From positions 158,940 through 222,939 of IMG/VR virus record IMGVR_UViG_3300037805_000644: DNA of 64,000 bases. One strand, written 5' to 3'. Below the pieces are notes generated by a model. The model ran no database searches and had not been told where the DNA came from. It saw only the letters and a program-made list of their open reading frames with translations. A program made the position numbers and the translations under genes. Of the stretch, positions 23,921-38,810 are shown in pieces. Within the stretch, counting starts at the first letter, position 1, and the number at the start of each line of letters is the position of its first letter.

Positions 23921-25378
23921 TTACTGTTGTCCCCGAAGGGCCTGGCCCCTTCGGGACATGATAGAGCCGAGCCGCAGGAACTTCCTGGCCTCAACTGGAT
24001 TGGGCTGACGCCCAAAGGCGGAGGCGCAAGCCCCCAGAAAATCTCTGCCGGTACTGTACCGACTGGTCGGGCCTGCACTCAGTGCTGCCCGGTATAGGTC
24101 TCGATCAACACTAATGCCGGCTGCCTTATCCAGAGCCGCCACGCCCTCAACGAGGGCGATATCGGTGCTGGCAATGCGAGTGAGGACACCTACGGCGGCC
24201 TCACGCTGGATGGTGTCATTCGGGGCGGTCGAGTCGCCAACGGACTTGGACAGGTCTCGGCCCCGCATCTCATCTTTGATGCGCTTTTTCACACGCTGCT
24301 GCATGTGCTCGGTCAACTCATCCTCGGTCTCATCGAGCGGGGATTTCTTCTCCGCAGGGGGGGCTTCACCACCCTCCTCAGCAGCGGGGGCATCCCCTTC
24401 TTCATCATCCCAGCCGGCGAGGAAAGCATCACCGCCCAGGGAGGCGCCTGTGTGCGTCGCACGAGCAGCACGCTGCATCTGGTCCGCATTCCACTCCGGC
24501 GGTGGGGTGTTCAGCACCTTGGCAGCCTTGTCGAGCATGGCCTGAGTCGGCTCCAACACATTCCGCAGGACTGCTCCCGTGAACGCGGGAGTCTCTACCC
24601 AGCTCGCCTCGATGAACCGGACACCGCCCGTGGGGTCGATGCTCTCATGGCCACACAGCTCTGCAATCCGATGCTGGCGACCCAGCTCATCGAAAAATGC
24701 GGTGCCTTTGGCGTACTTGATGTGAGAACACATCTCGGTTTCGTCAGCGGCCCAGTGCCCGCAACGGGTGCAGACCGTGCCGTCCACGGTGCAACCCATG
24801 GACATCGTGGCCATCTTGCCGGACGTGATGGCCTTAACCAACTCGGTGTGCTTGCGGTCCGTGGCCACCAGAATGTCGATGTAGATCGAATCCCCGATGT
24901 CCCGAGCCACTGCATCAATGATGCGGCCCTTGGACTGCTCCTCAATCTGTACGTGCTCGACGAAATTGTGCCCACCCACAAACGTCTCAAATGCCTTGAG
25001 CAGGACGGGCCGGCTCCAGGCATCGAGGTTGTTGTTGATGAATTTGTCGCAGCTCTGGCGGATACGGTACTCGGCGTAACGGCGGTTGACCCGGAAGCCC
25101 CCCTCCATGACATGACCGAGCCTCACCCCTTGCGGAGACTCCACATCCACCGAGGCCACGATAGTGGCATGGGTGAGCAGGAAGTTCTCAGGGTTGAAGG
25201 GCTTGCCCAAGATTTGGGTAGCCCGCTCCACCAGGTTGGAGGACATCGCCACCTTGGTCGGGCGAAAGGATGAGGCAACCTTCCCGTGCTGCTTAGCGGC
25301 GGCTCGGACATTGCCCCATTGCTCTTTCCTGATGGAAGGGGTGGCAACACTGGCGTATGCATACTTCATCAAAGGCAT
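23921..25378 (-). CDS. prohead (capsid maturation) protease
   Basis: NNNLDAW, FVEH (His), KGRIIDA, MSMGC (Ser), CTRCG...CSH zinc insert, FIEASWVETPAF; upstream of scaffold and MCP. Confidence 0.8.
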   Translation of the reverse strand: MPLMKYAYASVATPSIRKEQWGNVRAAAKQHGKVASSFRPTKVAMSSNLVERATQILGKPFNPENFLLTHATIVASVDVESPQGVRLGHVMEGGFRVNRRYAEYRIRQSCDKFINNNLDAWSRPVLLKAFETFVGGHNFVEHVQIEEQSKGRIIDAVARDIGDSIYIDILVATDRKHTELVKAITSGKMATMSMGCTVDGTVCTRCGHWAADETEMCSHIKYAKGTAFFDELGRQHRIAELCGHESIDPTGGVRFIEASWVETPAFTGAVLRNVLEPTQAMLDKAAKVLNTPPPEWNADQMQRAARATHTGASLGGDAFLAGWDDEEGDAPAAEEGGEAPPAEKKSPLDETEDELTEHMQQRVKKRIKDEMRGRDLSKSVGDSTAPNDTIQREAAVGVLTRIASTDIALVEGVAALDKAAGISVDRDLYRAALSAGPTSRYSTGRDFLGACASAFGRQPNPVEARKFLRLGSIMSRRGQALRGQQ

Positions 25379-25380
25379 GA

Positions 25381-26001
25381 TTACATCCCCCCCATCATGC
25401 GCTGGCGGGCCAGCCGGATGCCGGAGAACGGCTGAGGGGCAGGCCCCGCAGCATCCGCATCGAAGTAATCAGGGTGACCCATGATATCGCACTTCTTCAC
25501 CAGGAACATGCACTCAGGGCACCCGAGTAGCTTCTCCCGGGCTCCATCACGCATCTTGTAAGCAGCAGGGCGGAGACACCCCATCTTGCATTTGGGGCAG
25601 GTGTAACTGCCCGTATCAAGCTCTGCTTTTGTAGCCCTGTAATTGCGGTTCTTGGCCGCCCAATACAGAGACTTTTTGACAAAAGCCTGGGCAACTCGAA
25701 GAGAGCTGGCTGCCTTCGGCCCACCGGGGACAGACACGGTTCCGGCCCCACCGGGGACGTTGTCGTGCTCTGCCTTTGGCGGGATAAGATCTTTGGGTTC
25801 GTAACGCCCCAGCTCTTCAACTGGGTAACGCTCACTCCCGTGAGGCCACTCAACATCGACCATGCCGATAGCAGGGTAAACCGCCACGACACGACCGCTG
25901 TTTTCGTAGTTGCCGCTCATGAAAGGATACACCAGGTCACCGACCCCAAACTCTGAGGCCCGCTGCTGAAAATCCACGTATGCCGAGCGGTCTTTACTCA
26001 C
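25381..26001 (-). CDS. SH3-like plus zinc-ribbon head-associated protein
   Basis: VGDLV...GRVVAV...VDVEW; tag RVAQAFVKKS; CPKC...CPEC. Confidence 0.6.
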   Translation of the reverse strand: MSKDRSAYVDFQQRASEFGVGDLVYPFMSGNYENSGRVVAVYPAIGMVDVEWPHGSERYPVEELGRYEPKDLIPPKAEHDNVPGGAGTVSVPGGPKAASSLRVAQAFVKKSLYWAAKNRNYRATKAELDTGSYTCPKCKMGCLRPAAYKMRDGAREKLLGCPECMFLVKKCDIMGHPDYFDADAAGPAPQPFSGIRLARQRMMGGM

Positions 26002-26015
26002 GTCAGTTCTCCGAA

Positions 26016-26594
26016 TCAGGCGTACAGGTTGAAGCCGTGGGCCTTCTTGCCGGACTCTTTCTCGTCGCCCTCATCCTCATCCTCATCATCCTCAGCAGAC
26101 TTGACGATCTGGGAGGCAAGGCGTAGAGCTTTGGCAACCCGGGCCTCCTCGGCGAAGCTGAGGTTGGTGCTCTGGAGAGCAGCCACGAGGCTCAGGAAGC
26201 TGGCTTGGACGCCGGCCCGTGCGGGCTGCTCCGCCATGCTCGGAGCAGCAAGGTTGCCACCCTCCACTTCCTCGCGAAGCTCCCGGTTCTCCTGCTGGGA
26301 GAACTGGCCGCCCATGTAACCGGACTCGTCGCCGTCACCCTCAAGAGGACCGCCATCCTCCCGGCCGATCTCCGAGGGATCGAAGTCAGCGTTCTTGACC
26401 TCACCCCCCTCGTCACGCTCAAGGCCAGCGGTGACCTCAATGCGGTCCGAGAGGAGGTCGCAGCGGTGGGCGAAGTCAGCAGCGATTTTCTCGGGGATCC
26501 CGAGTGCTGCGTGCTCTGCCTGAATGAGGGTGGCAACGCGATCCAAAGCGGTAGAAGCCTGGAAAGCGCCCTTCTTGGTGATACGGTTGGGCAT
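26016..26594 (-). CDS. putative internal head / core protein
   Basis: Acidic; DRVATL, KNA, RVAKALRLA, KSA and KKA sites; own late motif upstream. Confidence 0.55.
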   Translation of the reverse strand: MPNRITKKGAFQASTALDRVATLIQAEHAALGIPEKIAADFAHRCDLLSDRIEVTAGLERDEGGEVKNADFDPSEIGREDGGPLEGDGDESGYMGGQFSQQENRELREEVEGGNLAAPSMAEQPARAGVQASFLSLVAALQSTNLSFAEEARVAKALRLASQIVKSAEDDEDEDEGDEKESGKKAHGFNLYA

Positions 26595-26732: not shown

Positions 26733-29700
26733 TCACGACTTCTTACCTTTACCCTTACCGCCCGGCCCCACCTTTCTGCCGTCGTTGTGGGCCTCAACCT
26801 TCTGGTCAAGGACATCCACCTCGCCTGTCTCACAGACGTGGCGCACACGGGCGACCTGGGGGTTCAGCTTGTCCGGCGCCTTACCTGTCACCTTCTCGGC
26901 GGCGGCGTATGTAGCGCACATGTCCGTCACCTGGAGAGAGTCTGCACCGCCCTTGCATTTCTCCAGCTCTGCCTGAGTGGTTGCCTTGGCAATGCAGCCT
27001 GCCAGCTTGTCGACCGCGTCCTTGAGGGTGCGGTCATTGCCTTTCTCGGCACGTACACGCTCCGCCAAATCCTCAGGCTTTGTGGTGGGGGCTCCCTTTT
27101 CGGGCTCGTCTCCACCACCGCCAAGAGAGTTGAGGAAACCTTGCATGGTGGTCATGTCGTTGACTGCCAGCATCTTGAGCAGATCTCGGGCGAAAGCTCT
27201 CTGCTCTCCGCCCATCAGGTTGTCCTCCCCCTCATCCAGGAGGGCGGCCCCGATGGGCCCATATGCGGTGTCCTTGCTGGCGACCACCTCTACCAGATCG
27301 GCGTCCGGTAGCGAGTCCAGCGCCTCACGCACCCTAGAGCGTCCCTCAGGCCCGTAAATCTCAGACCCACCCCGGAGTAGCAGACTATGGTCCCCCTGGG
27401 CTGCTAGGGCCTGTGAGAGCACCTGGAAGCTCTTGGAGACCTCATCGGCACCGGGGAGTTGGCGACCTTGCACTGAGGCAGCTAGAACCATCCCAGACTT
27501 GATGGCGTCCAGCTCAATGAACTCGTCGGACTCTGGGTCCAGGTTGCTCAACTGATCTTCAAGCTTCCGGGCAGCGACATCCATCAGCTCTGTGCCAGCC
27601 TTGAGGAACTGCCGGAAAGCATCCTCAGCGCGAGATTGGAGCTGATCAGCGGACTTGGTGCTGTCGTTGATTGGCACCCCACCCACCAAAGAGGGATCGG
27701 ACACCACCTGCCGGGCGAACACGTACTCGGCCAGCATCTCTGCCTGAGCCTCTAGGCTCCTGTCCCCTAGGCCCTTGAGATCCTGCTTGAGTGCCTTGTT
27801 GGCGGCCTTGAACGCCTCGGCCCGGAGCCCGTCAGCAGTGAACCGACCTTCCCGAAGCTGGCTCATATGGGCAGTGTATGCCTCCGCCAGAGCAGCGGCT
27901 CCCTTCTCATCCAAATCTCGAATCAGTCGATCTGCGTCCCGAGGGAGATCCTTGGTGACCTTGCTGAAATCGTCGAGCTGACGCTCATGTTTGGCCCGCT
28001 GTTTCTCCCGAGCCTTGCCTCGGTCAGCTTTTTCCTGCTCGGCAGCGGCCTCAGGGTCGGGCTCCTCTTCCTCAGACTTGCGGTTGCCCTCGGCCATCCG
28101 CTTGGCGGCGGGCTCATCCGTGGCAGAGGTGGGCTGCTTGGCGCCCGGAGGCCAGACCCCCCACCCGTTTCGGGTTTGCCAGTAATCGCCCTCTTTCTTG
28201 TCAGCGTCTGGGGCGACCCGAGCTGCGATCCTGGTGGCCGTGGCACTGCCCCACCCGCCGACCCGCACGGCTGCGTCCTGGGCCTTCAAGTGCGTGTGGA
28301 CCCCCTTGAGGATGATCTGCTTGTTCCTCGGGGTCAGGTACGGCTCGATGTCTGGCCACTTGGAGTCCTTCAACGCCTCCCTGACGGCCATATTGAAACC
28401 CATGCCGTAACCCATGAACTCTTGAACGGAGTCCCCCACCTGGGTCACCACATCGCGCATCAGCGCCCGGACCTCTGCGGGGTGGTTGTGGTGGTGCCGC
28501 TTCAAATCTTCCATTGACCCGGAGAGATCACCCGCCGAACCCTTGCCAGACCAAACGTCTGCCGCGTGGGTCAACTCATGGGCGAGGAGACGGTACAGCT
28601 CATCCTCGATGATCCGAGTGGGACGTTGCTCGAACGACCGAAGGTAAGGGTTGACGAACACCCTCATCAGCGGACCCTCCCCACGGCGCTTGAGGAAGCC
28701 CCCGTGAAGCAATTCGTTGTTGAACGGGTCAGGGTGCCTGCGTGGGGATCCCGTCAACAGGATCTCCACATCAATCTCATTGCCCAGGACGTTGGTGATG
28801 TACAGATACTCCTGAGCAACCACCTGACCTGGCCTGGGGAGCCCCCGCTGGCGGAGTTGTAGGGCCAGCTTCTTGGAGAGGGCCTTGATCTCCCGAGTGG
28901 GCAACCGGATGGGACGGGCCGCCTGTTTGGTGGAGGCGAGATCTCGGCCCTTGGGGGCGTCGTCAGGGTTGACCACACGCACGACTTCAAGGGCACGAGG
29001 GTCGTAGGTCTGGTTGCCCACTGTGGACTGCCAACCCTCCATCCAGAAACCCACAGCGCCCTTGGCCTGCACCTCACCAGCCCAGCGGTCCACCGCCTGC
29101 ACCAACGACTCGCCCCGCTTCATCTTGCGGGGCGACCTTTTCAGATACTTGAAGCCCGGCTTAACCCGAAGCTCCAGCAACGCCCCGTGCGGGAAATAGA
29201 TCGAGGCGTCTTCTGGCTTGTCCGCCGTGGAGATCGACGGCACGCCGTGCATGAACGTGGACACATCTCCAGAGCCTCGGGGGAGCTGGAGCCCTTTCCG
29301 CAGGATCGAAGGCACCCTGTCCCACGGCGTCGCGTGGTACTGCACCCTCGGCATCTTGGCCTGTTTGGCAGCGGCCGTGCGCTCGTTGGGCAGGCAGGCA
29401 CCCACCAAAGACATCAGGAGGCTGTCTCCGGCAGCCTCGATAGCAGCGACCTTCTTGAAGTTCAGGCTGAGGTCTGAATCCTGGTCGACCCCACCACCCG
29501 CCATATCGGGGTCATCCACCTTCATCTTGTTCCGGCGGAGGTCCTGACGAGGAGGCTTCTTGGAAGGCTTCTTGCGGTTCATCCGCTCAACCTCTTCCTT
29601 CTCTTTCTCGCCCTTGTCCTTGGTGGCGGTGACCTGCTTACCCAAGCGGGCCGCCATATCCGCATACTTGAGGGGTGCCCTCTGCTTGAGGCGCCGGGGC

Positions 29701-32700
29701 TCCTCTACGAATGCCCTGAAACACTCGGCGAAATCCTCGCTGGCGTTGGTCTCCGCGTAAGCCGACACGTAAGGTTCGATGCCGTAAACCTTGAAATAAG
29801 CGTCAACACCCCGGGTCTTCTCGTCAAAAGCATGACCCAGCTCGTGGGTGAGGTACGACCGGAGAATAGGGATTGAGGTCTTACGACCTGTGCCCACCAC
29901 CAGGGCCATCACCCCCCGGGACTCCCAGGAGGCGTCCTCCGACCCTCGGCCGACACCAAACCGCACCTTCCTGACCTCTGAGGCCCACAGCTTAGCTGAG
30001 TGGCCCTTGAGAGAACCTGCGGCCCTTGTCCAGGCGTGGATATCGAGGCTCCCCTCGGAGCTGTCCAGATCCAAACCTCGGGTTTGCCAACCCTTGCCGG
30101 TGGCACTTTCAAATGCAGCCAGGGCCTCATAGTGGGTCCGCAGCTTGCGCTCCTGCTTGCGGGGCGTCCTGGGGGTTTTCACCCCCTGGATGAGGCCCAA
30201 CTCCTCAGCCGGCACCTCTGCCCTGCCCAGCCACCCCACCAACTCGACTGTGGTCATCGGCTCCTCACCCATGACCGGGTCACTCATGCGGCGGATCTTC
30301 CGCTGGAGGAGACGCACGGTCGGGCTCGAAGAACCCCACCCTGTCGGGTCGGCCAAGATGGCTTTGATGATAGCCTTGAGGTAAGGCACCGTGACCGGAG
30401 ACCCGATCCCGGCCTGCTTTGTCAGGTCCTTCAACCCGGAACAGTAAGTGGGCACCGCATAAAGGATCTGGTCGTTGTCCTGGAGCTTCACAGGAGCCCT
30501 AGACAACAGGCGCACACCTTTTGCGAAGCTGACCACCTGGGGGTTGCGGAGCACCACATCTTGCTTCCAGACAATTTCCTCGGCGTACCCATACTGGGGC
30601 AGGGTCGCTGTCTGGAACACGATCCCCACCAGCTCATCCCCGGCATCCCACCTCGTGTGGTTGGTCTGGACTCGGGGGCGGTGCTGCCCCCAAACCAGAG
30701 AGACACCACTTACGGCGTCGATCCCCATTTTCTTGTAGGGGGGCCTCATCAGGAGCTTGCCTCCTTGGATGATCTGAACGGCCCTGCTGCGGAGGGTGAA
30801 ATGGATGAACCTGTCTTTCTTGATGTCCATCAAGAAAAACCTATCCCCATACTGCTCTGCCTCCCCACACTCCAACTGCCTCAGGGGGTTGCCTTGATCC
30901 GCGTACTTCTTAGCAGGGGTTGCCTCAAACACCTCCCCATAAGGGGTGAGGATCGAACCTCTCCGCCCTCGGCGAGGGTACACGAGGCCCAGCACAGCCA
31001 GCATCCTATGGCCCTCACCTAGGTGGACAGGGTTCGGGTGTGCCGCTTGCAGCTCCAGCAACAGATTATGCATGTGCCGGGTCAGGCGCGGGGCCACCCT
31101 GGCGGTGAGCAATCCCGCCTGGGGCCCCTTAGGGTTTACCGAAGCCACACGATCACCAATCATCTTGAGGCCCTGAGGGTCGGGGCTGCTGCCGATTTTC
31201 CCCAACCACCGAGAGGCCACCCGGTGGGCCGCACCTTTCACGGGGCCATTGTCGTACACGAGCCCTAGGTGCTTCGGCTGGGCCGAAAGGCGTAGGATGA
31301 CCTCACTCTCGTGTCCGAAAGCACGGCTGTTCAGGGGGGTGTCCGGCACGCCAGGGTGTAGGAACACGTCTCCTCGCTTGACCTCGAAAGCATGTACCTG
31401 TCCCATCATCGGGTGTTCCGTGGTCAGGGAGGCCCCGCCCATCTTGGCGGCCGACTGACCGGGCTTCATGCGGCGGTACATCACCGCAGAGGGCCCGTGA
31501 GCCTTGGTGAAAGCAGCGGACACCGCCTGGTCGAAAGCTCGTTTCAGCGTGGGGTCCATCCCTGCATAGCGGCGGAAAGCCTCGGCCTTCCCCTTAGGGT
31601 CATTATAAAACACCCAGTCGGACAAGCCAGGCCACAGCTCTTCAAGGGCATCGTCCTGGGCACCGCTGGCAGCTTTGGGCACGGGGCCACCCCACACGGC
31701 ATCACCCACCGAGAAAAAGCGACGCTTCAAGGACACCCACACACCATCGGCAGCCATAGGGCTGGTCATGCCCCTGTGCCAGCAATGCTCAGGGACAAGG
31801 GCGCACCCTTGGCTGGCGGCTTTCTGCACCGCCTGGTCATAGAGCGCCTTACCCCAACCCTCACCACGGTGGTCCTCATCCACGTAAGAGCTGGTGACCA
31901 TGTACAGGCCCTTGAGGGAGGGCACCCGGGCACGCAGGTCCTCGACATCCGCTGAGCAATGCTTGGCCCTCTCGAAGGGCAGGCGCTCCATCTTCACCCC
32001 ACCAAGGATGCCTCGCTCATTCACCTCTTCCCCGTAGTCGCTGTACTCCACCACGCGCCCACGGATGAGGAAAAGAAACCCGCCGGCAGAGGACTTCACC
32101 TCGATCTTGGGCATCGCGGCCTTCTTGCTCTGGCTCAGGCTGTCGGACACCTCACCCTTGGAAAGGTACTTGTCTGCCAGACCAGGCACCAGGTACTGAC
32201 TCTTGAGGGTCGCAGGCTCATGGCCTACTGCCGCTGCGGACTCCTTGAGGGCCTGCTCAAACTCTTTCTTGAGCTTTTCCCCACGCTCTTTCTTGTCTGA
32301 GGGCAGCTTCCCGCCCTTGCTGCGGATCGCCTTGAGGCGGCTCTGCATCTCTGAGTTGGCGTGGAAGCCCCGCATGTCCTTGGCGGTGATGCCGAAAGGC
32401 TTGAGGTACGTGTTCACGTCAGAGGCGCCCACGGAACCGGTGAGGCTGTCGTTTGCACCCTTGCCCTCCTTAGCCGCCTTGAGGGCAGAGACCAGGCCCG
32501 CGTCCGTCACGACCTTGTCGTGGGACACGCCTGACTTGCCGACGTACTTGAGGGTCGCCTTGCCTCCTGAGAGGGTCAGGTGCTTGACCTTCCACCCGGT
32601 GACCCCGAAATGCCCGTCCTTGGCAGAGGAGTCGTTACCGATCCGCTCATAGGTCTCATCCATCAGCCCGACCACCAGGGCCTTGAGCCGGGTGCCTTCG

Positions 32701-33773
32701 TCCTTGGACTTGAGATCCTTCTTGACCTGGCTGCGGAGCTTGCCGATGGAGCCACGTAGTTTCTCGACCCGCTTGGCTTTCTCCCGGTTCCTGTGCTGGA
32801 CCTGACCCTCGGTGTACTCGTAAACGGTCGTGGTCCCCTTGCCGTCGGCCTTAGGGACTTCTTTTTTCTTCTGGAACTTGGCAGCGATTCGTGAAATGGC
32901 GCTCATGCTTGCTTCCTTGGCGTCTGCCTTACGGACGAAATTGATGGGGCAGGCTGGGGCCTCTGACGCGTTAGGCTCGTAGTAACCAGCGGCGGCCCCG
33001 AGGATCTTACCCCGATGACCAGCCTGCCGGAACCGGGCGGCCACTGCCTTGATCGTGGTGCCCGTCGTCACGATGTCGTCGATGATGAGCACGTCCTCGT
33101 TGGGGTCGATCCCTGCCACCGCAATAGACTGAATATGATCGTCCAGGGTGACTCCGGGGAGACCCCTCTGCCGGCGCATCCGGGAGGATTCCACGGGGGC
33201 GACTCGGGATGCCGCCGTTTCGGCGCGGGTCCCCACACCTTGGGCCACCAGGGCCTCTGCAAACCTCATCAGAGGGGGGCTTGTGCCCTTGGAGCGAGGG
33301 GCAGGTACCACCACCCCCCGAAACCCCCGCAATGCAGGGTGACTGCTCAGATGGGCTGCACACTTCCGGGCTGCTTTCGGGTCCCCATCCTTGAGTTTCT
33401 GGATCAGGTCTTGAACGCCATCGCAGTCCGGGCTGATGCCTCGGTGGTGCGTGCGGGACAGATACACAAAAGCAGCATACACCGGGACTGACCCCGCCCC
33501 TCGGGTGCGCATCTGAGATGAGACCGTCTGTACCGCTGCGGCTTTCTCAACCTGCTCCAGCTTGTCATAGTAATGAGGGTCCTCCGTCAGGTGGTCCACG
33601 GCCACCTCCCGGGCAATATCCTTGTTGTCCGTGTGCTCCATCTCGACCTTGATCCCTTTCGCCAACTGAGGAGGGTCGAAATCAGAAGGCACGCGATCAT
33701 CGCCGATCCCACCGGGCATCTGGTCCCGGTACCTGGCGGCCACCCTATCCTCTGGGCTCTTAGGACCTTTCAT
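26733..33773 (-). CDS. 2346-aa polyvalent protein: DUF5661, PRTase, topoisomerase IB, GNAT, ART (R-S-E), ART (H-type), zincin, ART (H-type), zincin, helical C-terminal region
   Basis: GIKVEMEHT..DHLTEDPHYY; VLIIDDIVTTGTT; ERIGN/GKSG/KDMR/GHEP..KSQY; VDEDHRGEGWGKALY; MYRR/ASLTT/HESEVIL; FIHFT..IIQGGKL..EEIVW; HELGH..EDFAE; YHAT..SILRKGL; HELTH..EVRA. Confidence 0.85.
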   Translation of the reverse strand: MKGPKSPEDRVAARYRDQMPGGIGDDRVPSDFDPPQLAKGIKVEMEHTDNKDIAREVAVDHLTEDPHYYDKLEQVEKAAAVQTVSSQMRTRGAGSVPVYAAFVYLSRTHHRGISPDCDGVQDLIQKLKDGDPKAARKCAAHLSSHPALRGFRGVVVPAPRSKGTSPPLMRFAEALVAQGVGTRAETAASRVAPVESSRMRRQRGLPGVTLDDHIQSIAVAGIDPNEDVLIIDDIVTTGTTIKAVAARFRQAGHRGKILGAAAGYYEPNASEAPACPINFVRKADAKEASMSAISRIAAKFQKKKEVPKADGKGTTTVYEYTEGQVQHRNREKAKRVEKLRGSIGKLRSQVKKDLKSKDEGTRLKALVVGLMDETYERIGNDSSAKDGHFGVTGWKVKHLTLSGGKATLKYVGKSGVSHDKVVTDAGLVSALKAAKEGKGANDSLTGSVGASDVNTYLKPFGITAKDMRGFHANSEMQSRLKAIRSKGGKLPSDKKERGEKLKKEFEQALKESAAAVGHEPATLKSQYLVPGLADKYLSKGEVSDSLSQSKKAAMPKIEVKSSAGGFLFLIRGRVVEYSDYGEEVNERGILGGVKMERLPFERAKHCSADVEDLRARVPSLKGLYMVTSSYVDEDHRGEGWGKALYDQAVQKAASQGCALVPEHCWHRGMTSPMAADGVWVSLKRRFFSVGDAVWGGPVPKAASGAQDDALEELWPGLSDWVFYNDPKGKAEAFRRYAGMDPTLKRAFDQAVSAAFTKAHGPSAVMYRRMKPGQSAAKMGGASLTTEHPMMGQVHAFEVKRGDVFLHPGVPDTPLNSRAFGHESEVILRLSAQPKHLGLVYDNGPVKGAAHRVASRWLGKIGSSPDPQGLKMIGDRVASVNPKGPQAGLLTARVAPRLTRHMHNLLLELQAAHPNPVHLGEGHRMLAVLGLVYPRRGRRGSILTPYGEVFEATPAKKYADQGNPLRQLECGEAEQYGDRFFLMDIKKDRFIHFTLRSRAVQIIQGGKLLMRPPYKKMGIDAVSGVSLVWGQHRPRVQTNHTRWDAGDELVGIVFQTATLPQYGYAEEIVWKQDVVLRNPQVVSFAKGVRLLSRAPVKLQDNDQILYAVPTYCSGLKDLTKQAGIGSPVTVPYLKAIIKAILADPTGWGSSSPTVRLLQRKIRRMSDPVMGEEPMTTVELVGWLGRAEVPAEELGLIQGVKTPRTPRKQERKLRTHYEALAAFESATGKGWQTRGLDLDSSEGSLDIHAWTRAAGSLKGHSAKLWASEVRKVRFGVGRGSEDASWESRGVMALVVGTGRKTSIPILRSYLTHELGHAFDEKTRGVDAYFKVYGIEPYVSAYAETNASEDFAECFRAFVEEPRRLKQRAPLKYADMAARLGKQVTATKDKGEKEKEEVERMNRKKPSKKPPRQDLRRNKMKVDDPDMAGGGVDQDSDLSLNFKKVAAIEAAGDSLLMSLVGACLPNERTAAAKQAKMPRVQYHATPWDRVPSILRKGLQLPRGSGDVSTFMHGVPSISTADKPEDASIYFPHGALLELRVKPGFKYLKRSPRKMKRGESLVQAVDRWAGEVQAKGAVGFWMEGWQSTVGNQTYDPRALEVVRVVNPDDAPKGRDLASTKQAARPIRLPTREIKALSKKLALQLRQRGLPRPGQVVAQEYLYITNVLGNEIDVEILLTGSPRRHPDPFNNELLHGGFLKRRGEGPLMRVFVNPYLRSFEQRPTRIIEDELYRLLAHELTHAADVWSGKGSAGDLSGSMEDLKRHHHNHPAEVRALMRDVVTQVGDSVQEFMGYGMGFNMAVREALKDSKWPDIEPYLTPRNKQIILKGVHTHLKAQDAAVRVGGWGSATATRIAARVAPDADKKEGDYWQTRNGWGVWPPGAKQPTSATDEPAAKRMAEGNRKSEEEEPDPEAAAEQEKADRGKAREKQRAKHERQLDDFSKVTKDLPRDADRLIRDLDEKGAAALAEAYTAHMSQLREGRFTADGLRAEAFKAANKALKQDLKGLGDRSLEAQAEMLAEYVFARQVVSDPSLVGGVPINDSTKSADQLQSRAEDAFRQFLKAGTELMDVAARKLEDQLSNLDPESDEFIELDAIKSGMVLAASVQGRQLPGADEVSKSFQVLSQALAAQGDHSLLLRGGSEIYGPEGRSRVREALDSLPDADLVEVVASKDTAYGPIGAALLDEGEDNLMGGEQRAFARDLLKMLAVNDMTTMQGFLNSLGGGGDEPEKGAPTTKPEDLAERVRAEKGNDRTLKDAVDKLAGCIAKATTQAELEKCKGGADSLQVTDMCATYAAAEKVTGKAPDKLNPQVARVRHVCETGEVDVLDQKVEAHNDGRKVGPGGKGKGKKS

Positions 33774-36700
33774 ACTGGCTCCACCTTGAGGATCTTGACT
33801 TTGCGGGGATCGAACAGAGCCACCTCAGGGACACCGTCGACAAGGCCAGAGCCGTGGAAAACCACGCAATCATAGCCGTTCTTCCGGGCCTTGCGGGCCT
33901 GCTCTTTGCGGGCGGTGACCAAGACGTTCTGTGCCTTCACCATTACGGTGTACACCTTGGGTCGGTATTTCGCAGAGTCGAGGCCCAAGGTGTCCAGGGA
34001 GTCATAAACGTACTCGGGCAACCCAGTGCCCTGGCTGAACAGGGAGCCCCCAGCGGGGGGCGGCTCAACCTTACTGCCCAGAATGTATCCTGCAATGTCG
34101 TTCAGATCGTTGGGGTCCATGTCGCCCATGAGAGCGTCGATGTCCTCTCCGGTCGTGAGGTTGTTGGTGGCCATCCAGTGGTCCCACCCTTTCCCGTGCC
34201 CCAAGTCGAACATGCTTTGGAGTAGGCTCCCCCCGCCCTTGTTCAGCCTCGCCAGCTCAGCAATGATCGAGACGGGGAACCCAATGTTCCTGTTTGCATC
34301 GGCATACCGGACAGCGACCCGCTTTGAGGGGGTCAGGAAAATGCCCTTGCCGTAAAACTTGGACACCAGGTCATCCCGGGATTGCGCCATGTCGAAGGCC
34401 CGGAACGACCGGGTGGTGCCGTGGTAAAGGATCGTGCCCGCCCCCGACACAAGCCCTTCCAAGCCTTCCTGTTTGAGATCGATATTGGCAACACGGGTCA
34501 GGTACTGACTCGCCACACGGGCGGCGGCCTTTTTCCTGGCGCGGCCCTCGTCAAAGCGAAGCTTGAACAGCCTCACATCTTTCTTCTTGGTCTTGCCGTC
34601 CTTGTCAGGCTCGGTCTCGACCACCACCATCGGGTCACCCTTGGGTCCCTTCTTGAAATCGACGATGTAACCCTTGCTGTTGAGATATTTCCCGGTAAGA
34701 ACGGGGTCACCGAGGTTCAACGTGAACGACTTGGCTACCCGGGCTGCCGCCACTTTCTCATCACGGGACAGCCTCATGAGGGGCTTCCCATAAAGACCCG
34801 ACAGGCTCAGGGCTCGCTGCATCCGAAACTTCCCCATTTCGGACAGGCGTCCGGGAGCTGCCATGAAGGCAACGAAAGACTCCGCGAAATCCTCCCTCTC
34901 GTTGGTCTTGGCATACTCAGTCGGAACCTGGAGGGCTTCGAGAGCCTGGGCCACGGCACTATCATCTTGGGCGTAAGCAGCCACCTGCTCCTTGGTGAGT
35001 GTGGGGTGGGTGAAAGACTCCACCCCTGTTGCACCCAATGTGCTCTTCACCTGGCGAAACACTCGGTCCATTCTTCTCTGATAATCACTTTCCCCCGGGG
35101 AAGTCCCATAATCTTCGGACAGGAGTCTCACAGGATCGGATAGGAGTCGGTGCATGCGCACCCCACGATCTCGGTTCCAGCGGAGTTGTTTCGGCGTAAC
35201 AAAAGGGCCTCCTGCTAGAGGCTCATGCAGCCAGGCGTGGAACTTCATCCTGTCGAGCCCCCGAAGGCGGATACCCCGCAGGTTACCCTCGGATTCCTCC
35301 AACAGGCCCCAGAACCTCATACGTTCCGGGAGGGAGACCCCTCGGATGTCCTTTTCGGTCTGTGCATCGACCTTCTCTGCCTCCTGGACAGGAATCCACC
35401 CGGAGTCCCACTCCTTGCGGGCTTCGGGGTGCATGAGGGTCAGGTGAAAGTGATGACCCACCTCATGGAGAAAGATCTCGTGGATCCACTCCCGGAGCAT
35501 CCGCCCATCCACCCTTCCCGCAGCCGCAGTGAGGAGCTGGATACGCCCCCGGTCGCCATACCACCCGTGAGCAGTCTCTCCCTCAGAGCTGTGTCGGATG
35601 ATGATGGTGTGTACCGTCTCGTGGAGCAGAGGGGTTACACCCCTCTGCTTGAACAGGCCCACCACATAATCCACACCGGATAGGAACTTTCGGATCGTGG
35701 GTTCGGGAAGGCGGTCGGGGTTCTGAACGGAAAAACCCTGGTATTTGAAACGCCGCACTCCCGCCTGCCTGGCAAAGCTATTGAGCTGATCAGCATAAGA
35801 ATCAAGGGCAGTGAGGAGCACCTGAACCCGGTAAGTCAGGGTCACCCCCTCTCCCACCACAAGGCTGGTGTGGAATTTGACAGACTTGAAAAGGTCTCCT
35901 GCCGCATCCCGAACACGCCTACGGATGCTGTAATCGATGGCATCCCGTCCAAGGGATCGAAGAACCCAGCCGCCAAAAGGCCGCCCAAAATGCAGGGGGT
36001 GTGCTCCAGGCTGGCTGAGGGCGTGGGGGAACCCATCCTCTTGCAGTTTCTCCCGCAGCTTTCCCTCAGGGACGCGGCTCAGGCCCTTGAACCGTGCGTG
36101 AATCTTACTGAAAGCAACCAGCTCTTTGGAGATCTCTTTCCAATCAGCATCCGCCTGTGCCGGACCTTTCCAGACATAGCGAAGAGCCTCCCGTGCCACC
36201 TTTGCCGATCCAGCCTTGAGCTTGTGGGTCTTGGGCATCCCCCAGATCTCGATCTCGTCGAAAGTCCAGCTCCCCGTGGGGGTGACGCCACCGAACTCAG
36301 CCTCCAGGCCATCCAGGTAATCCAGGGTGGTGTGGGGGCGGTAAACCGTATAGCTGTCCCCTACCTCAATGCCCAAGTCTTGTACGGCGCTCTTGAGGCG
36401 GTCCCGCAGCTCTGCCATCCGGTGGCTGAACCGGATAGGCAGGATGGCCACACGACGCTCTTCGGCCGGGTGGGTGAAGTAATCGAGACCTTCAAGGTTC
36501 GCAGTGACCGGCTCACGCAGCTCCTCCGACACCACCCGCTGACAGGTGGAGACGAACTCAGCCTCCCTGCCCTTGACGTTCCCGACATAGAGCAGCGTGA
36601 TGTGGGGCGGCGACTTATCGTTGCCGGATTGCTTCTTGGGAAACTGATCGGCCAGGTGGCGGGGGAGAGGGATGAACAGACCTGTCCACTCGGTGGAGTC

Positions 36701-36808
36701 ACCGGTGGTCTTGCCGTCACTGGGTCCGGCGGACCTGTCCGCCCAGGCCGCAGCTACCTGCTTGACCGCCAAACGCCTTACCTGTGCTCGAAGGATGGGG
36801 TGATCCAC
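33770..36808 (-). CDS. 1012-aa polyvalent protein: 2H phosphoesterase, zincin, SH3-like barrel, ART-PolyVal-like
   Basis: PHITLLY and YRPHTTLDY; HEVGH...YAKTNEREDFAE; GDPVLTGKY..KGYI; LYHGT..F..F, GKGIFLT, GYDCV, EVALFDP. ATGA overlap with the 2346-aa gene. Confidence 0.85.
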   Translation of the reverse strand: MDHPILRAQVRRLAVKQVAAAWADRSAGPSDGKTTGDSTEWTGLFIPLPRHLADQFPKKQSGNDKSPPHITLLYVGNVKGREAEFVSTCQRVVSEELREPVTANLEGLDYFTHPAEERRVAILPIRFSHRMAELRDRLKSAVQDLGIEVGDSYTVYRPHTTLDYLDGLEAEFGGVTPTGSWTFDEIEIWGMPKTHKLKAGSAKVAREALRYVWKGPAQADADWKEISKELVAFSKIHARFKGLSRVPEGKLREKLQEDGFPHALSQPGAHPLHFGRPFGGWVLRSLGRDAIDYSIRRRVRDAAGDLFKSVKFHTSLVVGEGVTLTYRVQVLLTALDSYADQLNSFARQAGVRRFKYQGFSVQNPDRLPEPTIRKFLSGVDYVVGLFKQRGVTPLLHETVHTIIIRHSSEGETAHGWYGDRGRIQLLTAAAGRVDGRMLREWIHEIFLHEVGHHFHLTLMHPEARKEWDSGWIPVQEAEKVDAQTEKDIRGVSLPERMRFWGLLEESEGNLRGIRLRGLDRMKFHAWLHEPLAGGPFVTPKQLRWNRDRGVRMHRLLSDPVRLLSEDYGTSPGESDYQRRMDRVFRQVKSTLGATGVESFTHPTLTKEQVAAYAQDDSAVAQALEALQVPTEYAKTNEREDFAESFVAFMAAPGRLSEMGKFRMQRALSLSGLYGKPLMRLSRDEKVAAARVAKSFTLNLGDPVLTGKYLNSKGYIVDFKKGPKGDPMVVVETEPDKDGKTKKKDVRLFKLRFDEGRARKKAAARVASQYLTRVANIDLKQEGLEGLVSGAGTILYHGTTRSFRAFDMAQSRDDLVSKFYGKGIFLTPSKRVAVRYADANRNIGFPVSIIAELARLNKGGGSLLQSMFDLGHGKGWDHWMATNNLTTGEDIDALMGDMDPNDLNDIAGYILGSKVEPPPAGGSLFSQGTGLPEYVYDSLDTLGLDSAKYRPKVYTVMVKAQNVLVTARKEQARKARKNGYDCVVFHGSGLVDGVPEVALFDPRKVKILKVEPV

Positions 36809-36845: not shown

Positions 36846-36859
36846 ATAGGCTGATCACA
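36846..36859 (-). promoter_or_regulatory. putative late promoter motif within an inverted repeat
   Basis: Minus strand TGT-gatca-GCCTAT, about 38 nt upstream of 36808; part of the CAGCCTATACCC/GGGTATAGGCTG inverted repeat (36823-36853). Confidence 0.55.
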
Positions 36860-38810
36860 GCACTGCGGGCTTGAAACCCTTGAGCCGGGCCTCCAGGCTC
36901 GCAAGCCTGGAGGACATCTCTTGCCACTCATCCCGCAGCTTACCCTCAGTGCTTGCCAGGGCAGCCTTCTTGTGGGGGATGTCGGACTCAAGCTTGGACT
37001 GGAGGTCTCGGTCGAGGTACCCGTCGGAGGACAGAGCCTCGGAGGCTGTCTCTCGAATGGCCTCCTTGAGGAGGACCTTGAAGTTCTCCTGCACCTCCGG
37101 CGTGATGCCCTTGGAGGCGAAGCGGGACATGCCCTCTTCTTTCGGCTTGGCGTAGTTGAGCCCCAAGACCTCAGCAGCCCTCTGGGTGGCGTCCGTGGAC
37201 TCTGCCAGGGCATCTCCCACGCGGCTGTAAACCGAGCGCAGCACCTCATTGAAGGTGGCGTCCTGGAGGGTGAACGTGTCCCGCTCCAGCTTCTCCCGGA
37301 CCGTGTCTGCGTCCAGGTTGAGCAGGTCCAGGATGGTCTCGATATCCAACGAGCCCTTCTGGTACAGGTTGAACAGGGCGTCAAAGGTCTCCTGGTTGTC
37401 CCGCAAGGCAAGGCGGGTGAACGACAGGCGGGGATGCACCACAACCTCAAGGCCGTCTTCGTCAACCTCCATGAAGCCCATACGGCGACACATCGGCTCC
37501 AGAAGCTGCTTGTCCACGAAATCCTGGAGGAGTTCCCGCAAGAGCATGTACCGGACGTTGATCACCTCCAGGTGGATGCGGTCGCCGCTGTAGCTCGACT
37601 CACCGGAGAGCAAAGACTCTGTCACACCGAGGCCCGCATAGAGCTGGCGGTCTGTGAGATCGTACTCACCCGACAGGTCCAGGAGGCGGTTGTCTGCACC
37701 CATCTCCTCCCAGTTGACCTGGAAGTTGGTGATGACGCTGTGGTCAGGATCCTGGAGGGCCAGGTCTACCTGGTCCCGTAGCTCCTCGGTGTCGTTGGCG
37801 TCCATATCCTCAGCCCAGATGAGCCGGTAAGGGGTCATGTGGCGAGAGGCGATGGAGGTCTGGGCCTGCCGGAGCTTGTCTCGGTACACCAGGGTGCGGA
37901 GGCACCGCTGGAGGATCGACTTGCCCCGAGGCTCGTACTGGCTTTTCTTACGGGCCATGAAATGACAAAAGCTGCCGGCATTCGGGTTCGTGTTGAGAGG
38001 GATCTCCTCGCCTCGGAGAACGTAATCAACGACCTCAACAGGCATCGTCTCCACAACCTCGCGGGCCCTCATGTCGCCCTGAGCGGCGCGGTCGATAACG
38101 TCCTTGGTCAGGGAGTCTGGGATGAGGCTTAGGAGCACCTGATCTGTGAAAGGGAAAGCCTCCATCACGACCTGCTCAGGAGGAAGCACCCGAAGGGCTG
38201 TCCAGCCCTGGTAGTTCTCCTTGACCCACTGAACCATGCGTTTCTGTGCGTCGGGGTACTCCCGCTCTTCTTCCTTCAAAGAGCCGTCGGCTGCGATTTC
38301 GCGGTACGTCTCGTGCGTCACGCTCCGAGGCATGTCAGGGCTTGTGTCCTCGGCGAAAATGTTCACCTCACCGATGAGGAAATACTCGTGGACAATCTCC
38401 AATAGGCGGTGAAGCAAGCCCACCTCCCGAGCCCACCGCTCAACGAACCGCATGGCGGCATCCGCCATTTTCTTGTTCTTGGTCCGGGGCTTGCGGAATC
38501 GAAGCTTGCTCAGTGGCAGCTCGCCATGGAGATCGATGGCCTGGCCTACGAAAGGATCATTGTCGTAGAAAAAGCGGAAATAGTTCCGCATCTCGGCAGT
38601 GGACTGGGGCAGCTCCAGGAAGTCCGGGCTCAGCTCAGGGCTGTAAAAGTTACCGCCCGAGCCCGTCATCGTCCCCCCCGCCTGGGGGAACGCCATCTTC
38701 ATCATCTTTGAGGTGCCTGTGACCGTGCGGCGAGGCTTACCCGTCTTGACGTTAGCCCTCTCGGGGAGAGTCGCCACTCGTACGGTGTGTTTGGGATTGT
38801 TCTTCTTCAT
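36855..38810 (-). CDS. portal protein
   Basis: FFYDNDPFVGQAIDLH, EYFLIGEV, RGKSILQRC..LVYRDKLRQAQ; downstream of the terminase. Confidence 0.85.
   Translation of the reverse strand: MKKNNPKHTVRVATLPERANVKTGKPRRTVTGTSKMMKMAFPQAGGTMTGSGGNFYSPELSPDFLELPQSTAEMRNYFRFFYDNDPFVGQAIDLHGELPLSKLRFRKPRTKNKKMADAAMRFVERWAREVGLLHRLLEIVHEYFLIGEVNIFAEDTSPDMPRSVTHETYREIAADGSLKEEEREYPDAQKRMVQWVKENYQGWTALRVLPPEQVVMEAFPFTDQVLLSLIPDSLTKDVIDRAAQGDMRAREVVETMPVEVVDYVLRGEEIPLNTNPNAGSFCHFMARKKSQYEPRGKSILQRCLRTLVYRDKLRQAQTSIASRHMTPYRLIWAEDMDANDTEELRDQVDLALQDPDHSVITNFQVNWEEMGADNRLLDLSGEYDLTDRQLYAGLGVTESLLSGESSYSGDRIHLEVINVRYMLLRELLQDFVDKQLLEPMCRRMGFMEVDEDGLEVVVHPRLSFTRLALRDNQETFDALFNLYQKGSLDIETILDLLNLDADTVREKLERDTFTLQDATFNEVLRSVYSRVGDALAESTDATQRAAEVLGLNYAKPKEEGMSRFASKGITPEVQENFKVLLKEAIRETASEALSSDGYLDRDLQSKLESDIPHKKAALASTEGKLRDEWQEMSSRLASLEARLKGFKPAVL

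What the first reader, a model, noticed from the sequence alone, without database searches (positions are those of the whole stretch)
26733..33773. 2346-aa polyvalent arsenal polyprotein between portal and prohead protease
Approximate domain order: DUF5661 (33773-33535), PRTase (33530-32940), topoisomerase IB (32906-32120), GNAT (32114-31670), R-S-E ART (31665-31230), small unknown domain, H-type ART (30900-30415), zincin HELGH/EDFAE (30410-29625), KKPPR segment, H-type ART (29355-28920), zincin HELTH (28915-28270), helical C-terminal region. Junctions read EKAAA, RKA/KEA, KKAA, PKAA, KGAA, KKYA, TKQA, KKVAA, RTAAAKQA, TKQAA. Polyvalent proteins are a known class in phages and conjugative elements. 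Here the protein occupies the slot where MuF/gp7 minor head proteins usually lie, I recognise no MuF domain, and the linkers look like regular protease sites. Inference: a packaged, proteolytically released set of host-takeover or anti-defence enzymes.
Basis: partly seen in the sequence, partly recalled or inferred. Interest (0 to 1): 0.88.

Follow-up and report, generated by a model that had tools for sequence, protein, structure and literature searches.

The report
Giant multi-enzyme phage head protein
A 2346-residue phage protein encoded among the head-assembly genes strings about ten enzyme modules around a short conserved charged segment, and it belongs to a previously undescribed family found in more than 80 huge-phage contigs that probably loads enzymes into the capsid for delivery with the DNA.

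Summary
The ORF is real: 26733-33773, minus strand, 2346 aa, with the same protein seen on two contigs. It is a polyvalent (multi-effector) protein.

Domain calls:
- Confirmed: DUF5661, a type IB topoisomerase with an intact R-K-R-H-Y pentad, and GNAT.
- Sub-threshold: PRTase, and a zincin of the MPTase kind.
- ART fold, weak to moderate support from structure: the two 'H-type ARTs'.
- No support: the 'R-S-E ART'.

The KKPPR segment defines the family. IMG/VR holds 87 relatives and 56 distinct proteins of 134-3098 aa. In the loci long enough to show it, they all sit in one slot: portal, KKPPR protein, two small ORFs, prohead protease, MCP. 32 of the 56 carry Topo IB; the other modules vary.

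A junction motif, R-[VI]-A-x-[RK]-aromatic, marks module boundaries. It occurs 60 times against 0.8 expected, and it also sits at residues 6-8 of stand-alone homologues.

A separate 1012-aa polyvalent ORF lies between the portal gene and this ORF. No MuF domain was detected.

Packaging, cleavage and injection are inferred, not shown. Verdict: a new variant of a known kind. Interest 0.64.

The parts
26733..33773 (-). pv2346: 2346-aa polyvalent protein (whole ORF including stop)
33540..33773 (-). aa 1-78: N-terminal leader with junction motif (RVAARY at aa 10-15) followed by DUF5661
   Evidence: Pfam PF18905 E 1.3e-10; motif
32919..33539 (-). aa 79-285: phosphoribosyltransferase-like module with PRPP loop VLIIDDIVTTGTT
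   Evidence: PF00156 20.6 bits, below cut-off; NCBIfam PRTase models E 0.002-0.09; homologue in P0003 at E 7e-90
32121..32918 (-). aa 286-551: type IB topoisomerase, catalytic R377 K413 R468 H518 Y527; preceded by junction SRIAAKF
   Evidence: PF01028 E 5.5e-26; alignment to 2h7f; residue positions; present in 36/36 first-round relatives
31674..32120 (-). aa 552-700: GNAT acetyltransferase module
   Evidence: PF00583 22.1 bits against cut-off 20.7, aa 626-657; 12 family homologues
   Evidence: alignment A3; no Pfam or PDB hit; only two homologues
30906..31232 (-). aa 848-956: linker-like stretch with three junction-type motifs (HRVASRW, DRVASV, ARVAPRL); no homologues found
30417..30905 (-). 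aa 957-1119: abundant module family (invariant H-F-T, S, E-E-x-x-W); ART-like fold, weak support
   Evidence: alignment A1; AF2 pLDDT 91.7; Foldseek top hits DarT/TreTu/PARP13, E 0.056 or worse
29619..30416 (-). aa 1120-1385: zincin-like metallopeptidase (MPTase kind), HELGH at 1310 and EDFAE at 1346
   Evidence: alignment A4 invariants; sub-threshold Pfam zincins; profile against PDB zincin core E 0.0016
29376..29618 (-). aa 1386-1466: KKPPR segment, the family-defining charged segment (17 basic and 16 acidic residues), bracketed by junction motifs
28923..29375 (-). aa 1467-1617: ART-superfamily fold module (RES/Tpt1-like), Q-Y-H-A-T ... S-I-S-T
   Evidence: alignment A2; profile against Tpt1 E 0.046; AF2 pLDDT about 90; Foldseek RES probability 0.98, TM 0.5
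28269..28922 (-). aa 1618-1835: second zincin-like module, HELTH at 1732; preceded by junction TKQAAR in a low-confidence linker
26736..28268 (-). aa 1836-2346: GDYWQ motif plus a helical C-terminal region of about 400 aa, conserved in about half of the family
33770..36808 (-). pv1012: upstream 1012-aa polyvalent ORF (2H phosphoesterase, zincin HEVGH..EDFAE, small beta domain, junction KKAAARVASQY, ART-PolyVal). Its stop overlaps the start of pv2346. P0002 and P0004 carry its 2H phosphoesterase module and the Topo IB protein in one polypeptide
36855..38819 (-). portal protein
   Evidence: phrog_16240 E 1.4e-25
26016..26594 (-). orf192, conserved directly downstream of the KKPPR protein in most related loci
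25381..26001 (-). orf206, conserved between orf192 and the protease in related loci
23921..25378 (-). prohead (head maturation) protease, class unknown
   Evidence: phrog_18299 E 4.6e-14; no Pfam or PDB hit
20574..21446 (-). major capsid protein
   Evidence: phrog_2522 E 1.4e-50; 49.5% identical to Tunturi_5 and 38.5% to phage G gp27

Best explanation
pv2346, together with the overlapping upstream pv1012, is the cargo-carrying minor head protein of an uncultured jumbo phage whose capsid genes are related to those of phage G.

What is shown:
- Its conserved core is a short charged KKPPR segment, often accompanied by a helical C-terminal region.
- This core fills the same gene slot, between portal and prohead protease, in every related locus.
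- Enzyme modules have been added to the core in ever-changing combinations. Here they are a DUF5661 domain, a PRTase, a type IB topoisomerase, a GNAT, three small modules (two with an ART-type NAD-using fold) and two zincin peptidases.
- Each module is preceded by a short basic motif, R-[VI]-A-x-[RK]-aromatic or more loosely [KR]-x-A-[AS]-[KR], lying in a flexible linker.
- The same motif sits a few residues from the N-terminus of stand-alone homologues of these modules.

What is inferred:
- The protein is built into the prohead through its KKPPR/C-terminal core.
- It is cut at the junction motifs into separate enzymes. My first choice for the cutting enzyme is the prohead protease encoded two genes downstream.
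- The pieces leave with the DNA and act on the host early. Topoisomerase handles the incoming genome, while the NAD-using, acetylating and proteolytic modules modify host or defence components.

The confidence of 0.5 is for the whole chain. I put about 0.75 on a virion-associated polyvalent cargo protein, and about 0.35-0.4 on the prohead protease specifically being the enzyme that cuts at the motifs.
For: Intact ORF and domains.

Synteny: the order TerL, portal, slot protein, orf192, orf206, protease, X, orf239, MCP is kept in 16 of 17 Topo-IB loci. It is also kept in all KKPPR loci from IMG/VR that are long enough to show it, and in MAG contigs.

Family: there are 56 distinct KKPPR proteins of 134-3098 aa. 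32 carry Topo IB and 28 the C-terminal region. Minimal forms of 213-298 aa hold little beyond the KKPPR segment.

Variable modules: Pfam content differs from relative to relative.

Junction motif:
- Strict form: 60 observed against 0.8 in shuffles.
- Strict form: 47 against 0.7 in the independent set.
- Strict form: 28 against 0.5 after masking the inherited copies next to Topo IB and KKPPR.
- Loose [KR]-x-A-[AS]-[KRH] form: 65% of copies lie in the zone from -25 to +5 around homology-block starts, a zone that covers 27% of the sequence (p = 5e-18; two control motifs show no enrichment).
- In 15 of 65 stand-alone homologues the motif sits at residues 6-8 or at the extreme C-terminus.

Other points:
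- The junction before zincin 2 falls in a stretch with pLDDT below 50, between two folded modules.
- 30 of the 42 family members without any HExxH still carry junction motifs, which favours a protease acting in trans.
- Precedent: packaged and processed phage effectors such as T4 Alt and P1 DarA/DdrB, as reviewed in PMC5512222.
Against: - There are no proteomic data for this phage or any relative. The nearest cultured phages, Tunturi_5 and phage G, lack a detectable homologue.
- The junction motif is absent from the MCP, orf239, orf192 and orf206. Nothing therefore links it to known substrates of the prohead protease.
- The protease has no Pfam or PDB relative, so its specificity cannot be guessed.
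- The protein carries two zincins of the kind proposed to self-process polyvalent proteins.
- Several module identities are weak: ART folds at E 0.01-0.06, zincin 2 at low pLDDT, and module 701-847 unknown.
- No KKPPR relative was found in the genome collection. Related capsid genes sit in MAGs of many different phyla, so the host is unknown.
Confidence: 0.5

Rival explanations
1. Self-processing. The internal zincin (MPTase) modules, two here and one in pv1012, cut the polyprotein at the junction motifs, either in the capsid or after injection. The prohead protease plays no part.
For: This is the published model for the class (PMC5512222). Zincin 1 links to the same zincin core as that paper's MPTases. 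Zincins recur beside ART-type modules; P0028, for example, carries an ART-PolyVal domain and two copies of the zincin 2 module.
Against: 42 of 56 KKPPR proteins have no HExxH, and 30 of those still carry the junction motif. Minimal proteins of 213-298 aa keep motif-bracketed KKPPR segments with no peptidase. A zincin encoded in a neighbouring polyvalent ORF could still act in trans.
Confidence: 0.22
2. No cleavage. The motif is a targeting or docking element: a short basic amphipathic tag that binds the scaffold, portal or DNA and loads each module or stand-alone protein into the prohead. The giant protein stays whole, as N4 vRNAP does.
For: The motif lies at residues 6-8 of stand-alone homologues and at the N-terminus of pv2346, like a capsid-targeting leader. 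N4 vRNAP is packaged unprocessed (PMC5512222).
Against: One tag per protein would be enough for targeting, yet the motif recurs at nearly every module boundary. A folded 2346-aa chain of about ten modules would need to unfold module by module to pass through the tail.
Confidence: 0.15
3. Assembly or packaging helper rather than host-takeover arsenal. The conserved parts (KKPPR, C-terminal region, Topo IB) serve head assembly or the topology of a genome longer than 200 kb during packaging and ejection. The other modules are passengers.
For: Topo IB is the commonest module (32 of 56) and is encoded separately nearby when not fused. The KKPPR core exists without any enzyme. From my own knowledge, poxviruses package a type IB topoisomerase in the core.
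Against: 24 of 56 family members lack Topo IB in the slot protein. The slot protein diverges far faster than the capsid (32% against 91% identity), which is typical of conflict genes. This reading partly overlaps with the best explanation.
Confidence: 0.15
4. Not a virion protein. It is a late cytoplasmic multi-enzyme that merely sits in the head gene cluster.
For: There is no direct evidence of packaging, and no MuF or other known head-incorporation domain.
Against: The position between portal and protease is invariant across about 80 loci, with occasional fusion to the neighbouring orf192 or orf206. Enzymes of the classes known from packaged effectors are present.
Confidence: 0.08

Closest known systems
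Polyvalent proteins of phages and conjugative elements (Iyer, Burroughs, Anand, de Souza, Aravind 2017, PMC5512222)
   Same: There are many unrelated effector domains in one polypeptide, and the gene sits among virion genes. The domain classes match: zincin MPTase, ART, GNAT, PRTase and 2H.
   Different: There is no MuF, portal, N4-RNAP or ArdC-N anchor. The anchor is the KKPPR segment with or without a helical C-terminal region. Topoisomerase IB does not appear as a polyvalent-protein domain in that paper; the word occurs only in its reference list. A regular junction motif is not described there; 'linker' occurs 0 times. Most modules here fall outside the Pfam models derived from that work.
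MuF / SPP1 gp7 minor head proteins with fused effectors
   Same: The gene lies just after the portal gene, and a conserved head-associated part carries variable C- or N-terminal enzymes.
   Different: No Phage_Mu_F hit in Pfam or PHROGs, and the conserved part is unrelated in sequence.
T4 Alt and internal proteins (capsid-targeting leader removed by the gp21 prohead protease)
   Same: A packaged NAD-using enzyme is released with the DNA. A short N-terminal leader on stand-alone cargo proteins is mirrored by the motif at residues 6-8.
   Different: From my own knowledge, the T4 leaders end in L/I-x-E; the motif here is basic and has no Glu. Here many modules sit on one chain. Cleavage is not shown.
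Poxvirus type IB topoisomerase (PDB 2h7f, 1a41)
   Same: It is the best PDB sequence match, with all five catalytic residues aligned. From my own knowledge, the poxvirus enzyme is packaged in the virion core.
   Different: The phage domain is one module of a giant protein. Identity is low (E about 1e-11). Activity is untested.
Stand-alone Topo I with tyrosine-recombinase fold in jumbo phages (Iyer et al. 2021, PMC7824862)
   Same: Same enzyme class in jumbo phages. The Xanthomonas and Erwinia jumbo phage 'topoisomerase' genes match at 31.6% identity.
   Different: Those are treated as replication or recombination genes, not as parts of a head-module polyvalent protein.

Membership tests
Polyvalent proteins (Iyer et al. 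2017) | Two to fifteen unrelated, mostly enzymatic domains in one polypeptide | tested here: met
   At least four domains have Pfam support (DUF5661, Topo IB, GNAT, PRTase sub-threshold). Five further modules each have stand-alone homologues.
Polyvalent proteins (Iyer et al. 2017) | Encoded among phage late/virion genes or in a conjugation locus | tested here: met
   It lies between portal and prohead protease, and the synteny holds across about 80 loci.
Polyvalent proteins (Iyer et al. 2017) | Hub domains of the class: zincin MPTase, ART | tested here: inconclusive
   The HExxH+E motifs are invariant, and the zincin profile link is sub-threshold. ART-PolyVal (PF18760) hits pv1012 but not pv2346. 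ART-fold matches have E 0.01-0.06.
Polyvalent proteins (Iyer et al. 2017) | Delivered into the recipient cell with the DNA | not testable with these tools
   This needs virion proteomics or an injection assay. There is no cultured relative with a homologue.
MuF / gp7 minor head protein | Phage_Mu_F domain | tested here: not met
   No such hit at E up to 0.1 in Pfam, and none in PHROGs.
Type IB topoisomerase | Topoisom_I catalytic core above the Pfam gathering score | tested here: met
   91.8 bits against a cut-off of 23.7, aa 326-525.
Type IB topoisomerase | Catalytic pentad Arg-Lys-Arg-His-Tyr | tested here: met
   R377, K413, R468, H518 and Y527 align with R130, K167, R223, H265 and Y274 of 2h7f.
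Type IB topoisomerase | DNA relaxation through a 3'-phosphotyrosyl intermediate | not testable with these tools
   Needs a biochemical assay.
ADP-ribosyltransferase superfamily, module 1467-1617 | ART fold with NAD-binding strand-helix motif | tested here: inconclusive
   AF2 pLDDT about 90. Foldseek gives RES toxin at probability 0.98, TM 0.5, E 0.011, then Tpt1. A sequence profile reaches Tpt1 at E 0.046. No hit has E at or below 0.001.
ADP-ribosyltransferase superfamily, module 957-1119 | ART fold with H / Y-or-S / E triad | tested here: inconclusive
   pLDDT 91.7. The top seven PDB hits are ART-fold proteins, but E is 0.056 or worse and TM is 0.3-0.46. H, S and E are invariant in 28 sequences.
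R-S-E ADP-ribosyltransferases (Alt/VIP2-like), module 701-847 | Detectable similarity to any ART profile or structure | tested here: not met
   No Pfam hit at E up to 1, no PDB profile hit, hhalign against the other modules is not significant, and only two homologues exist. The structure was not predicted.
Zincin-like MPTase | HExxH helix followed by a helix with the third-ligand Glu, after an N-terminal helix and three strands | tested here: inconclusive
   Zincin 1: HExGH and EDFAE are invariant in 14 sequences, with sub-threshold profile hits. Zincin 2: the secondary-structure order fits, but pLDDT is 40-60.
GNAT acetyltransferase | Pfam Acetyltransf_1 above the gathering score | tested here: met
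   22.1 bits against 20.7, but only profile positions 62-93 of 116.
Phosphoribosyltransferase | Pribosyltran above the gathering score; PRPP-binding loop | tested here: inconclusive
   20.6 bits against 26.3. The PRPP loop is matched by 18 NCBIfam models, all far below their cut-offs.

The most novel reading that the evidence does not exclude
The junction motif and the KKPPR core together form a general cargo system. Any module preceded by the R-V-A-x-R-aromatic tag would be loaded into the prohead and set free by the maturation protease. This would apply whether the module sits inside the giant slot protein or is encoded as a separate small gene elsewhere in the genome. The phage could then swap its injected enzyme set simply by recombination at the tags. 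A type IB topoisomerase would be the near-constant passenger that prepares the huge genome on entry. This would be a MuF-independent, sequence-addressable packaging-and-release code for phage effectors.
Probability: 0.3. Interest if true: 0.82.

Novelty: new variant of a known kind. Interest (0 to 1): 0.64.

Why it matters
Polyvalent proteins are thought to be how phages deliver many counter-defence and takeover enzymes at the moment of DNA entry. How they are anchored in the capsid and how they are cut into working units is largely unknown.

This family offers three things:
- A compact, recognisable anchor: the KKPPR segment.
- A regular junction motif that can be mutated or used as a peptide substrate.
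- A natural series from 213 to 3098 aa in one fixed gene slot.

The anchoring and processing questions therefore become directly testable. The family also puts a type IB topoisomerase among candidate virion-delivered phage proteins. Finally, it provides a catalogue of small module families, unknown to Pfam, that are good candidates for new anti-defence activities.

Tried and rejected
- PHROGs on the whole protein: 0 families.
- tblastn of the C-terminal region against cultured phages: no match.
- Family HMMs (C-terminal region, KKPPR, orf192, orf206) against the head regions of Tunturi_5 and phage G: nothing. The annotated 'DNA ejection protein' gp328 of Tunturi_5 is not a detectable homologue.
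- Word-indexed search with the C-terminal region: only P0002 and P0004.
- Word-indexed search with module 701-847: only two proteins.
- Pfam scans of 28, 10 and 3 homologues of the three 'ART' modules: no ART family.
- Pairwise hhalign among the three modules: not significant.
- BFVD fold search with module 957-1119: no hit at E 0.001 or below.
- Genome-collection scans. A single KKPPR segment found nothing. The MCP found contigs binned into MAGs of many phyla, so there is no host inference.
- Protease class: no Pfam or PDB match for it or four relatives.
- Junction motif in other head proteins: absent from MCP, orf239, orf192 and orf206.
- Boundaries of slot proteins fused to orf192 or orf206: no motif there, and some 'fusions' may be artefacts of my ORF calling.
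- DNA repeats at junctions: only a 17-nt pair flanking module 1467-1617, which could be chance.
- Literature: no paper in the library describes a virion or polyvalent phage Topo IB. The phage G multi-omics paper has nothing on cleavage sites.
- Ten further window ORFs: no PHROG hit. tRNAs: none.
Full report
**1. The observation**

The ORF exists exactly as stated: 26733..33773 on the minus strand, 2346 aa, ATG start. Its ATG overlaps the TGA of an upstream 1012-aa ORF as ATGA. The identical protein is recorded from two contigs, the longest 240,846 bp. The window is 100% identical to IMG/VR contig 3300037805_000644, 222,939 bp. G+C content is even across the region. I saw no sign of misassembly, but reads were not available.

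The minus-strand gene order is:
- large terminase, 39445-41397
- a 129-aa ORF
- portal, 36855-38819
- pv1012, 33770-36808
- pv2346
- orf192
- orf206
- prohead protease, 23921-25378
- an unnamed gene
- orf239
- major capsid protein, 20574-21446

'Between portal and prohead protease' is therefore right only loosely. A second polyvalent ORF separates pv2346 from the portal gene. It holds a 2H phosphoesterase, a zincin HEVGH..EDFAE, a small beta domain and ART-PolyVal. In the closest relatives, P0002 and P0004, the 2H phosphoesterase module of pv1012 lies in the same polypeptide as the Topo IB protein. The phage thus splits one arsenal of 3358 aa into two translationally coupled ORFs.

**2. Domain calls**

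A full HMMER pass of aa 701-1835 over 1.84 billion representative proteins gave 748 hits. Stand-alone proteins match aa 707-842, 958-1116, 1121-1384, 1467-1612 and 1614-1832.

The identities are uneven.

Firm:
- DUF5661 (41.8 bits against a cut-off of 27).
- Type IB topoisomerase (E 5.5e-26). R377, K413, R468, H518 and Y527 align to the catalytic pentad of the poxvirus enzyme 2h7f.
- GNAT, which just passes the PF00583 cut-off over the acetyl-CoA motif.

Sub-threshold but consistent:
- PRTase, through its PRPP loop.
- Zincin 1. HExGH and EDFAE are invariant in 14 sequences. There are weak Peptidase_Mx/M90/ATLF hits, and a profile hit to the zincin core of lethal factor at E 0.0016. This is the same remote link by which Iyer et al. 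defined the MPTase of polyvalent proteins. The similarity is limited to the zinc-binding helices.

Supported by structure only:
- Module 957-1119 folds with pLDDT 91.7. Its seven best PDB matches are all ART-fold proteins (DarT, TreTu, PARP13), but E is 0.056 or worse and TM is 0.3-0.46. BFVD adds nothing significant.
- Module 1467-1617 folds with pLDDT about 90. It matches RES toxin at probability 0.98 and TM 0.5, then Tpt1/KptA. A sequence profile independently reaches Tpt1 at E 0.046.
- Zincin 2 has the helix, three strands, HExxH helix and Glu helix order of a zincin, but pLDDT is only 40-60.

Unsupported:
- The 'R-S-E ART' (701-847) is a real conserved module. It has no Pfam, PDB or profile relative and only two homologues in 5.8 billion proteins.
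- The 'small unknown domain' (848-956) has no homologues. It holds three junction-type motifs, so it may be linker rather than domain.

**3. What it belongs to**

A word-indexed search found 36 large proteins (1345-3381 aa). All share the Topo IB module, and their other Pfam domains differ: PF01743, PF13563, PF18760, inteins, PF09414, PF04752, PF02195, PF00856 and others.

Mapping our segments onto them shows which parts are shared:
- Topo IB: 36 of 36
- KKPPR segment: 30 of 36
- helical C-terminal region: 20 of 36
- every other module: 0 to 5

In pv2346 the pair of modules at 1467-1835 is inserted between KKPPR and the C-terminal region. In P0002 and P0004 those two parts are adjacent.

I then scanned IMG/VR with an alignment of the KKPPR segment alone (A7). 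This gave 87 relatives, of which 80 loci were kept, on contigs up to 618 kb. They encode 56 distinct KKPPR proteins of 134-3098 aa. In the loci long enough to show it, the protein lies in one slot: portal, KKPPR protein, orf192, orf206, protease, X, orf239, MCP. 32 carry Topo IB and 28 the C-terminal region. In five loci Topo IB is a separate gene nearby. The smallest members (213-298 aa) are a small Cys-containing domain plus KKPPR.

The KKPPR segment, not Topo IB, defines the family. It is the functional analogue of MuF in this clade. No MuF domain is detectable.

The capsid protein is 49.5% identical to that of Tunturiibacter phage Tunturi_5 and 38.5% to phage G gp27. Family HMMs find no slot-protein homologue in either cultured phage. 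A MAG contig whose MCP is 91% identical has a slot protein whose C-terminal region is only 32% identical. This gene evolves far faster than the capsid.

**4. The junction motif**

Counts:
- Strict form: 60 in 37 proteins against 0.8 in shuffles.
- Strict form: 47 against 0.7 in the independent 56-protein set.
- Strict form: 28 against 0.5 after masking the copies next to Topo IB and KKPPR, which are inherited by homology.
- Loose form: 115 against 31.6 ± 5.5. 65% lie within -25 to +5 of the start of a homology block, a zone that covers 27% of the sequence (p = 5e-18). Two control motifs show no enrichment.

Placement:
- The KKPPR segment is itself bracketed by R-V-A-T-K-[TS] and K-R-V-A-x-R-[YW].
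- Among 65 stand-alone homologues of the modules, 15 carry the strict motif, nearly always at residues 6-8 or at the extreme C-terminus.
- pv2346 itself starts MKGPKSPEDRVAARY.
- In the AF2 model the junction TKQAAR lies in a stretch with pLDDT below 50, between two folded modules.
- Within the window the strict motif is confined to the two polyvalent ORFs, one small ORF at 49040-49348 and one other site.

**5. Mechanism**

Shown: a multi-enzyme protein, a fixed place in the head module, a conserved core with variable modules, and a regular boundary motif in a flexible linker.

Inferred: incorporation into the prohead through the core, cleavage at the motifs, and release with the DNA.

I favour the prohead protease as the cutting enzyme, because 42 of 56 family members lack any HExxH and 30 of those keep the motif. 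This is not proof. The motif is missing from the MCP, orf239, orf192 and orf206. The protease has no classifiable relative. The published model for the class is zincin self-processing. A non-cleaved targeting tag also remains possible, given the position at residues 6-8 in stand-alone proteins.

The near-constant Topo IB suggests a role on the incoming genome. From my own knowledge, this would be analogous to the packaged poxvirus enzyme. A role in packaging topology cannot be excluded.

**6. Comparison and novelty**

The class is known (PMC5512222). PRTase, GNAT, ART, 2H and MPTase modules and the virion-gene context are all described there.

New here:
- The anchor. KKPPR with or without the C-terminal region takes the place of MuF, portal, N4-RNAP or ArdC-N.
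- Topo IB as the dominant module. In that paper the word occurs only in the reference list. Jumbo-phage Topo I is mentioned elsewhere only as a stand-alone replication gene.
- The regular junction motif shared with stand-alone genes.
- The spread of the family through more than 80 huge-phage contigs.
- Several abundant module families with no Pfam model.

I found no paper describing any of this. I rate it a new variant of a known kind, with interest 0.64.

Noticed in passing
window 49040-49348 (-) and 44862-45560 (-): Two other ORFs carry the junction-type motif at a terminus. One reads MARRVARKWVRRL just after an internal Met. The other ends ...ARLAARYSGRTA. They could be separately encoded tagged cargo. 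Neither has a PHROG hit.
   Followed up: partly
window 33770-36808 (-): The upstream 1012-aa ORF is itself a polyvalent protein (2H phosphoesterase, zincin, small beta domain, ART-PolyVal). Its stop overlaps the start of pv2346 (ATGA). The closest relatives, P0002 and P0004, carry the 2H phosphoesterase module in the same polypeptide as the Topo IB protein.
   Followed up: yes
window 29689-29759 and 34845-34915: A 71-nt direct repeat at 72% identity covers the EDFAE helices of zincin 1 and of the pv1012 zincin, so the two peptidase modules are paralogues. A 17-nt repeat (28921-28937 / 29359-29375) marks the two KQA junctions flanking module 1467-1617; this could be chance.
   Followed up: partly
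L027, L035, L039, L043, L049, L050, L062, L066, L075, L085, L091, L096; P0009, P0011, P0029: Relatives have greatly enlarged terminase (about 950-1110 aa), portal (about 980-1100 aa) and protease (about 890-1474 aa) genes. They also have inteins (PF14528/PF14890) inside a PolyA_pol module. Inteins or further fusions seem common in this clade.
   Followed up: no
L099 (MAG contig CALEMP010000021.1): Its capsid protein is 91% identical to the window's, but the C-terminal region of its KKPPR protein is only 32% identical. The slot protein diverges far faster than the capsid.
   Followed up: partly
L099-L107: Related capsid genes sit on contigs binned into MAGs of Actinomycetota, Altiarchaeales, Legionellales, Methylobacter, Anaerolineaceae and Nitrospirae. 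This is almost certainly binning noise, so the host stays unknown.
   Followed up: no
L054:9360-10001, L070:9542-10189, L081, L090, L092; also P0018 and P0113: The minimal KKPPR proteins share an N-terminal domain of about 130 aa with a conserved LLPIMSPLFNLRE ... CPDCIRKH motif of unknown function. It has no Pfam hit.
   Followed up: partly
pv1012 aa about 690-750 and many relatives: A small domain (SFTLNLGDPVL.GKY.N..G.I..F ... KLFK.R.D) and a short H-K-P-G-D-V-W-x-T motif recur, sometimes repeated, across the family. Neither was identified.
   Followed up: no
window, ten ORFs between 10713 and 49348; whole window: None of ten further ORFs has a PHROG family, and there are no tRNA genes. Outside the head module this phage is almost entirely unannotatable.
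   Followed up: no
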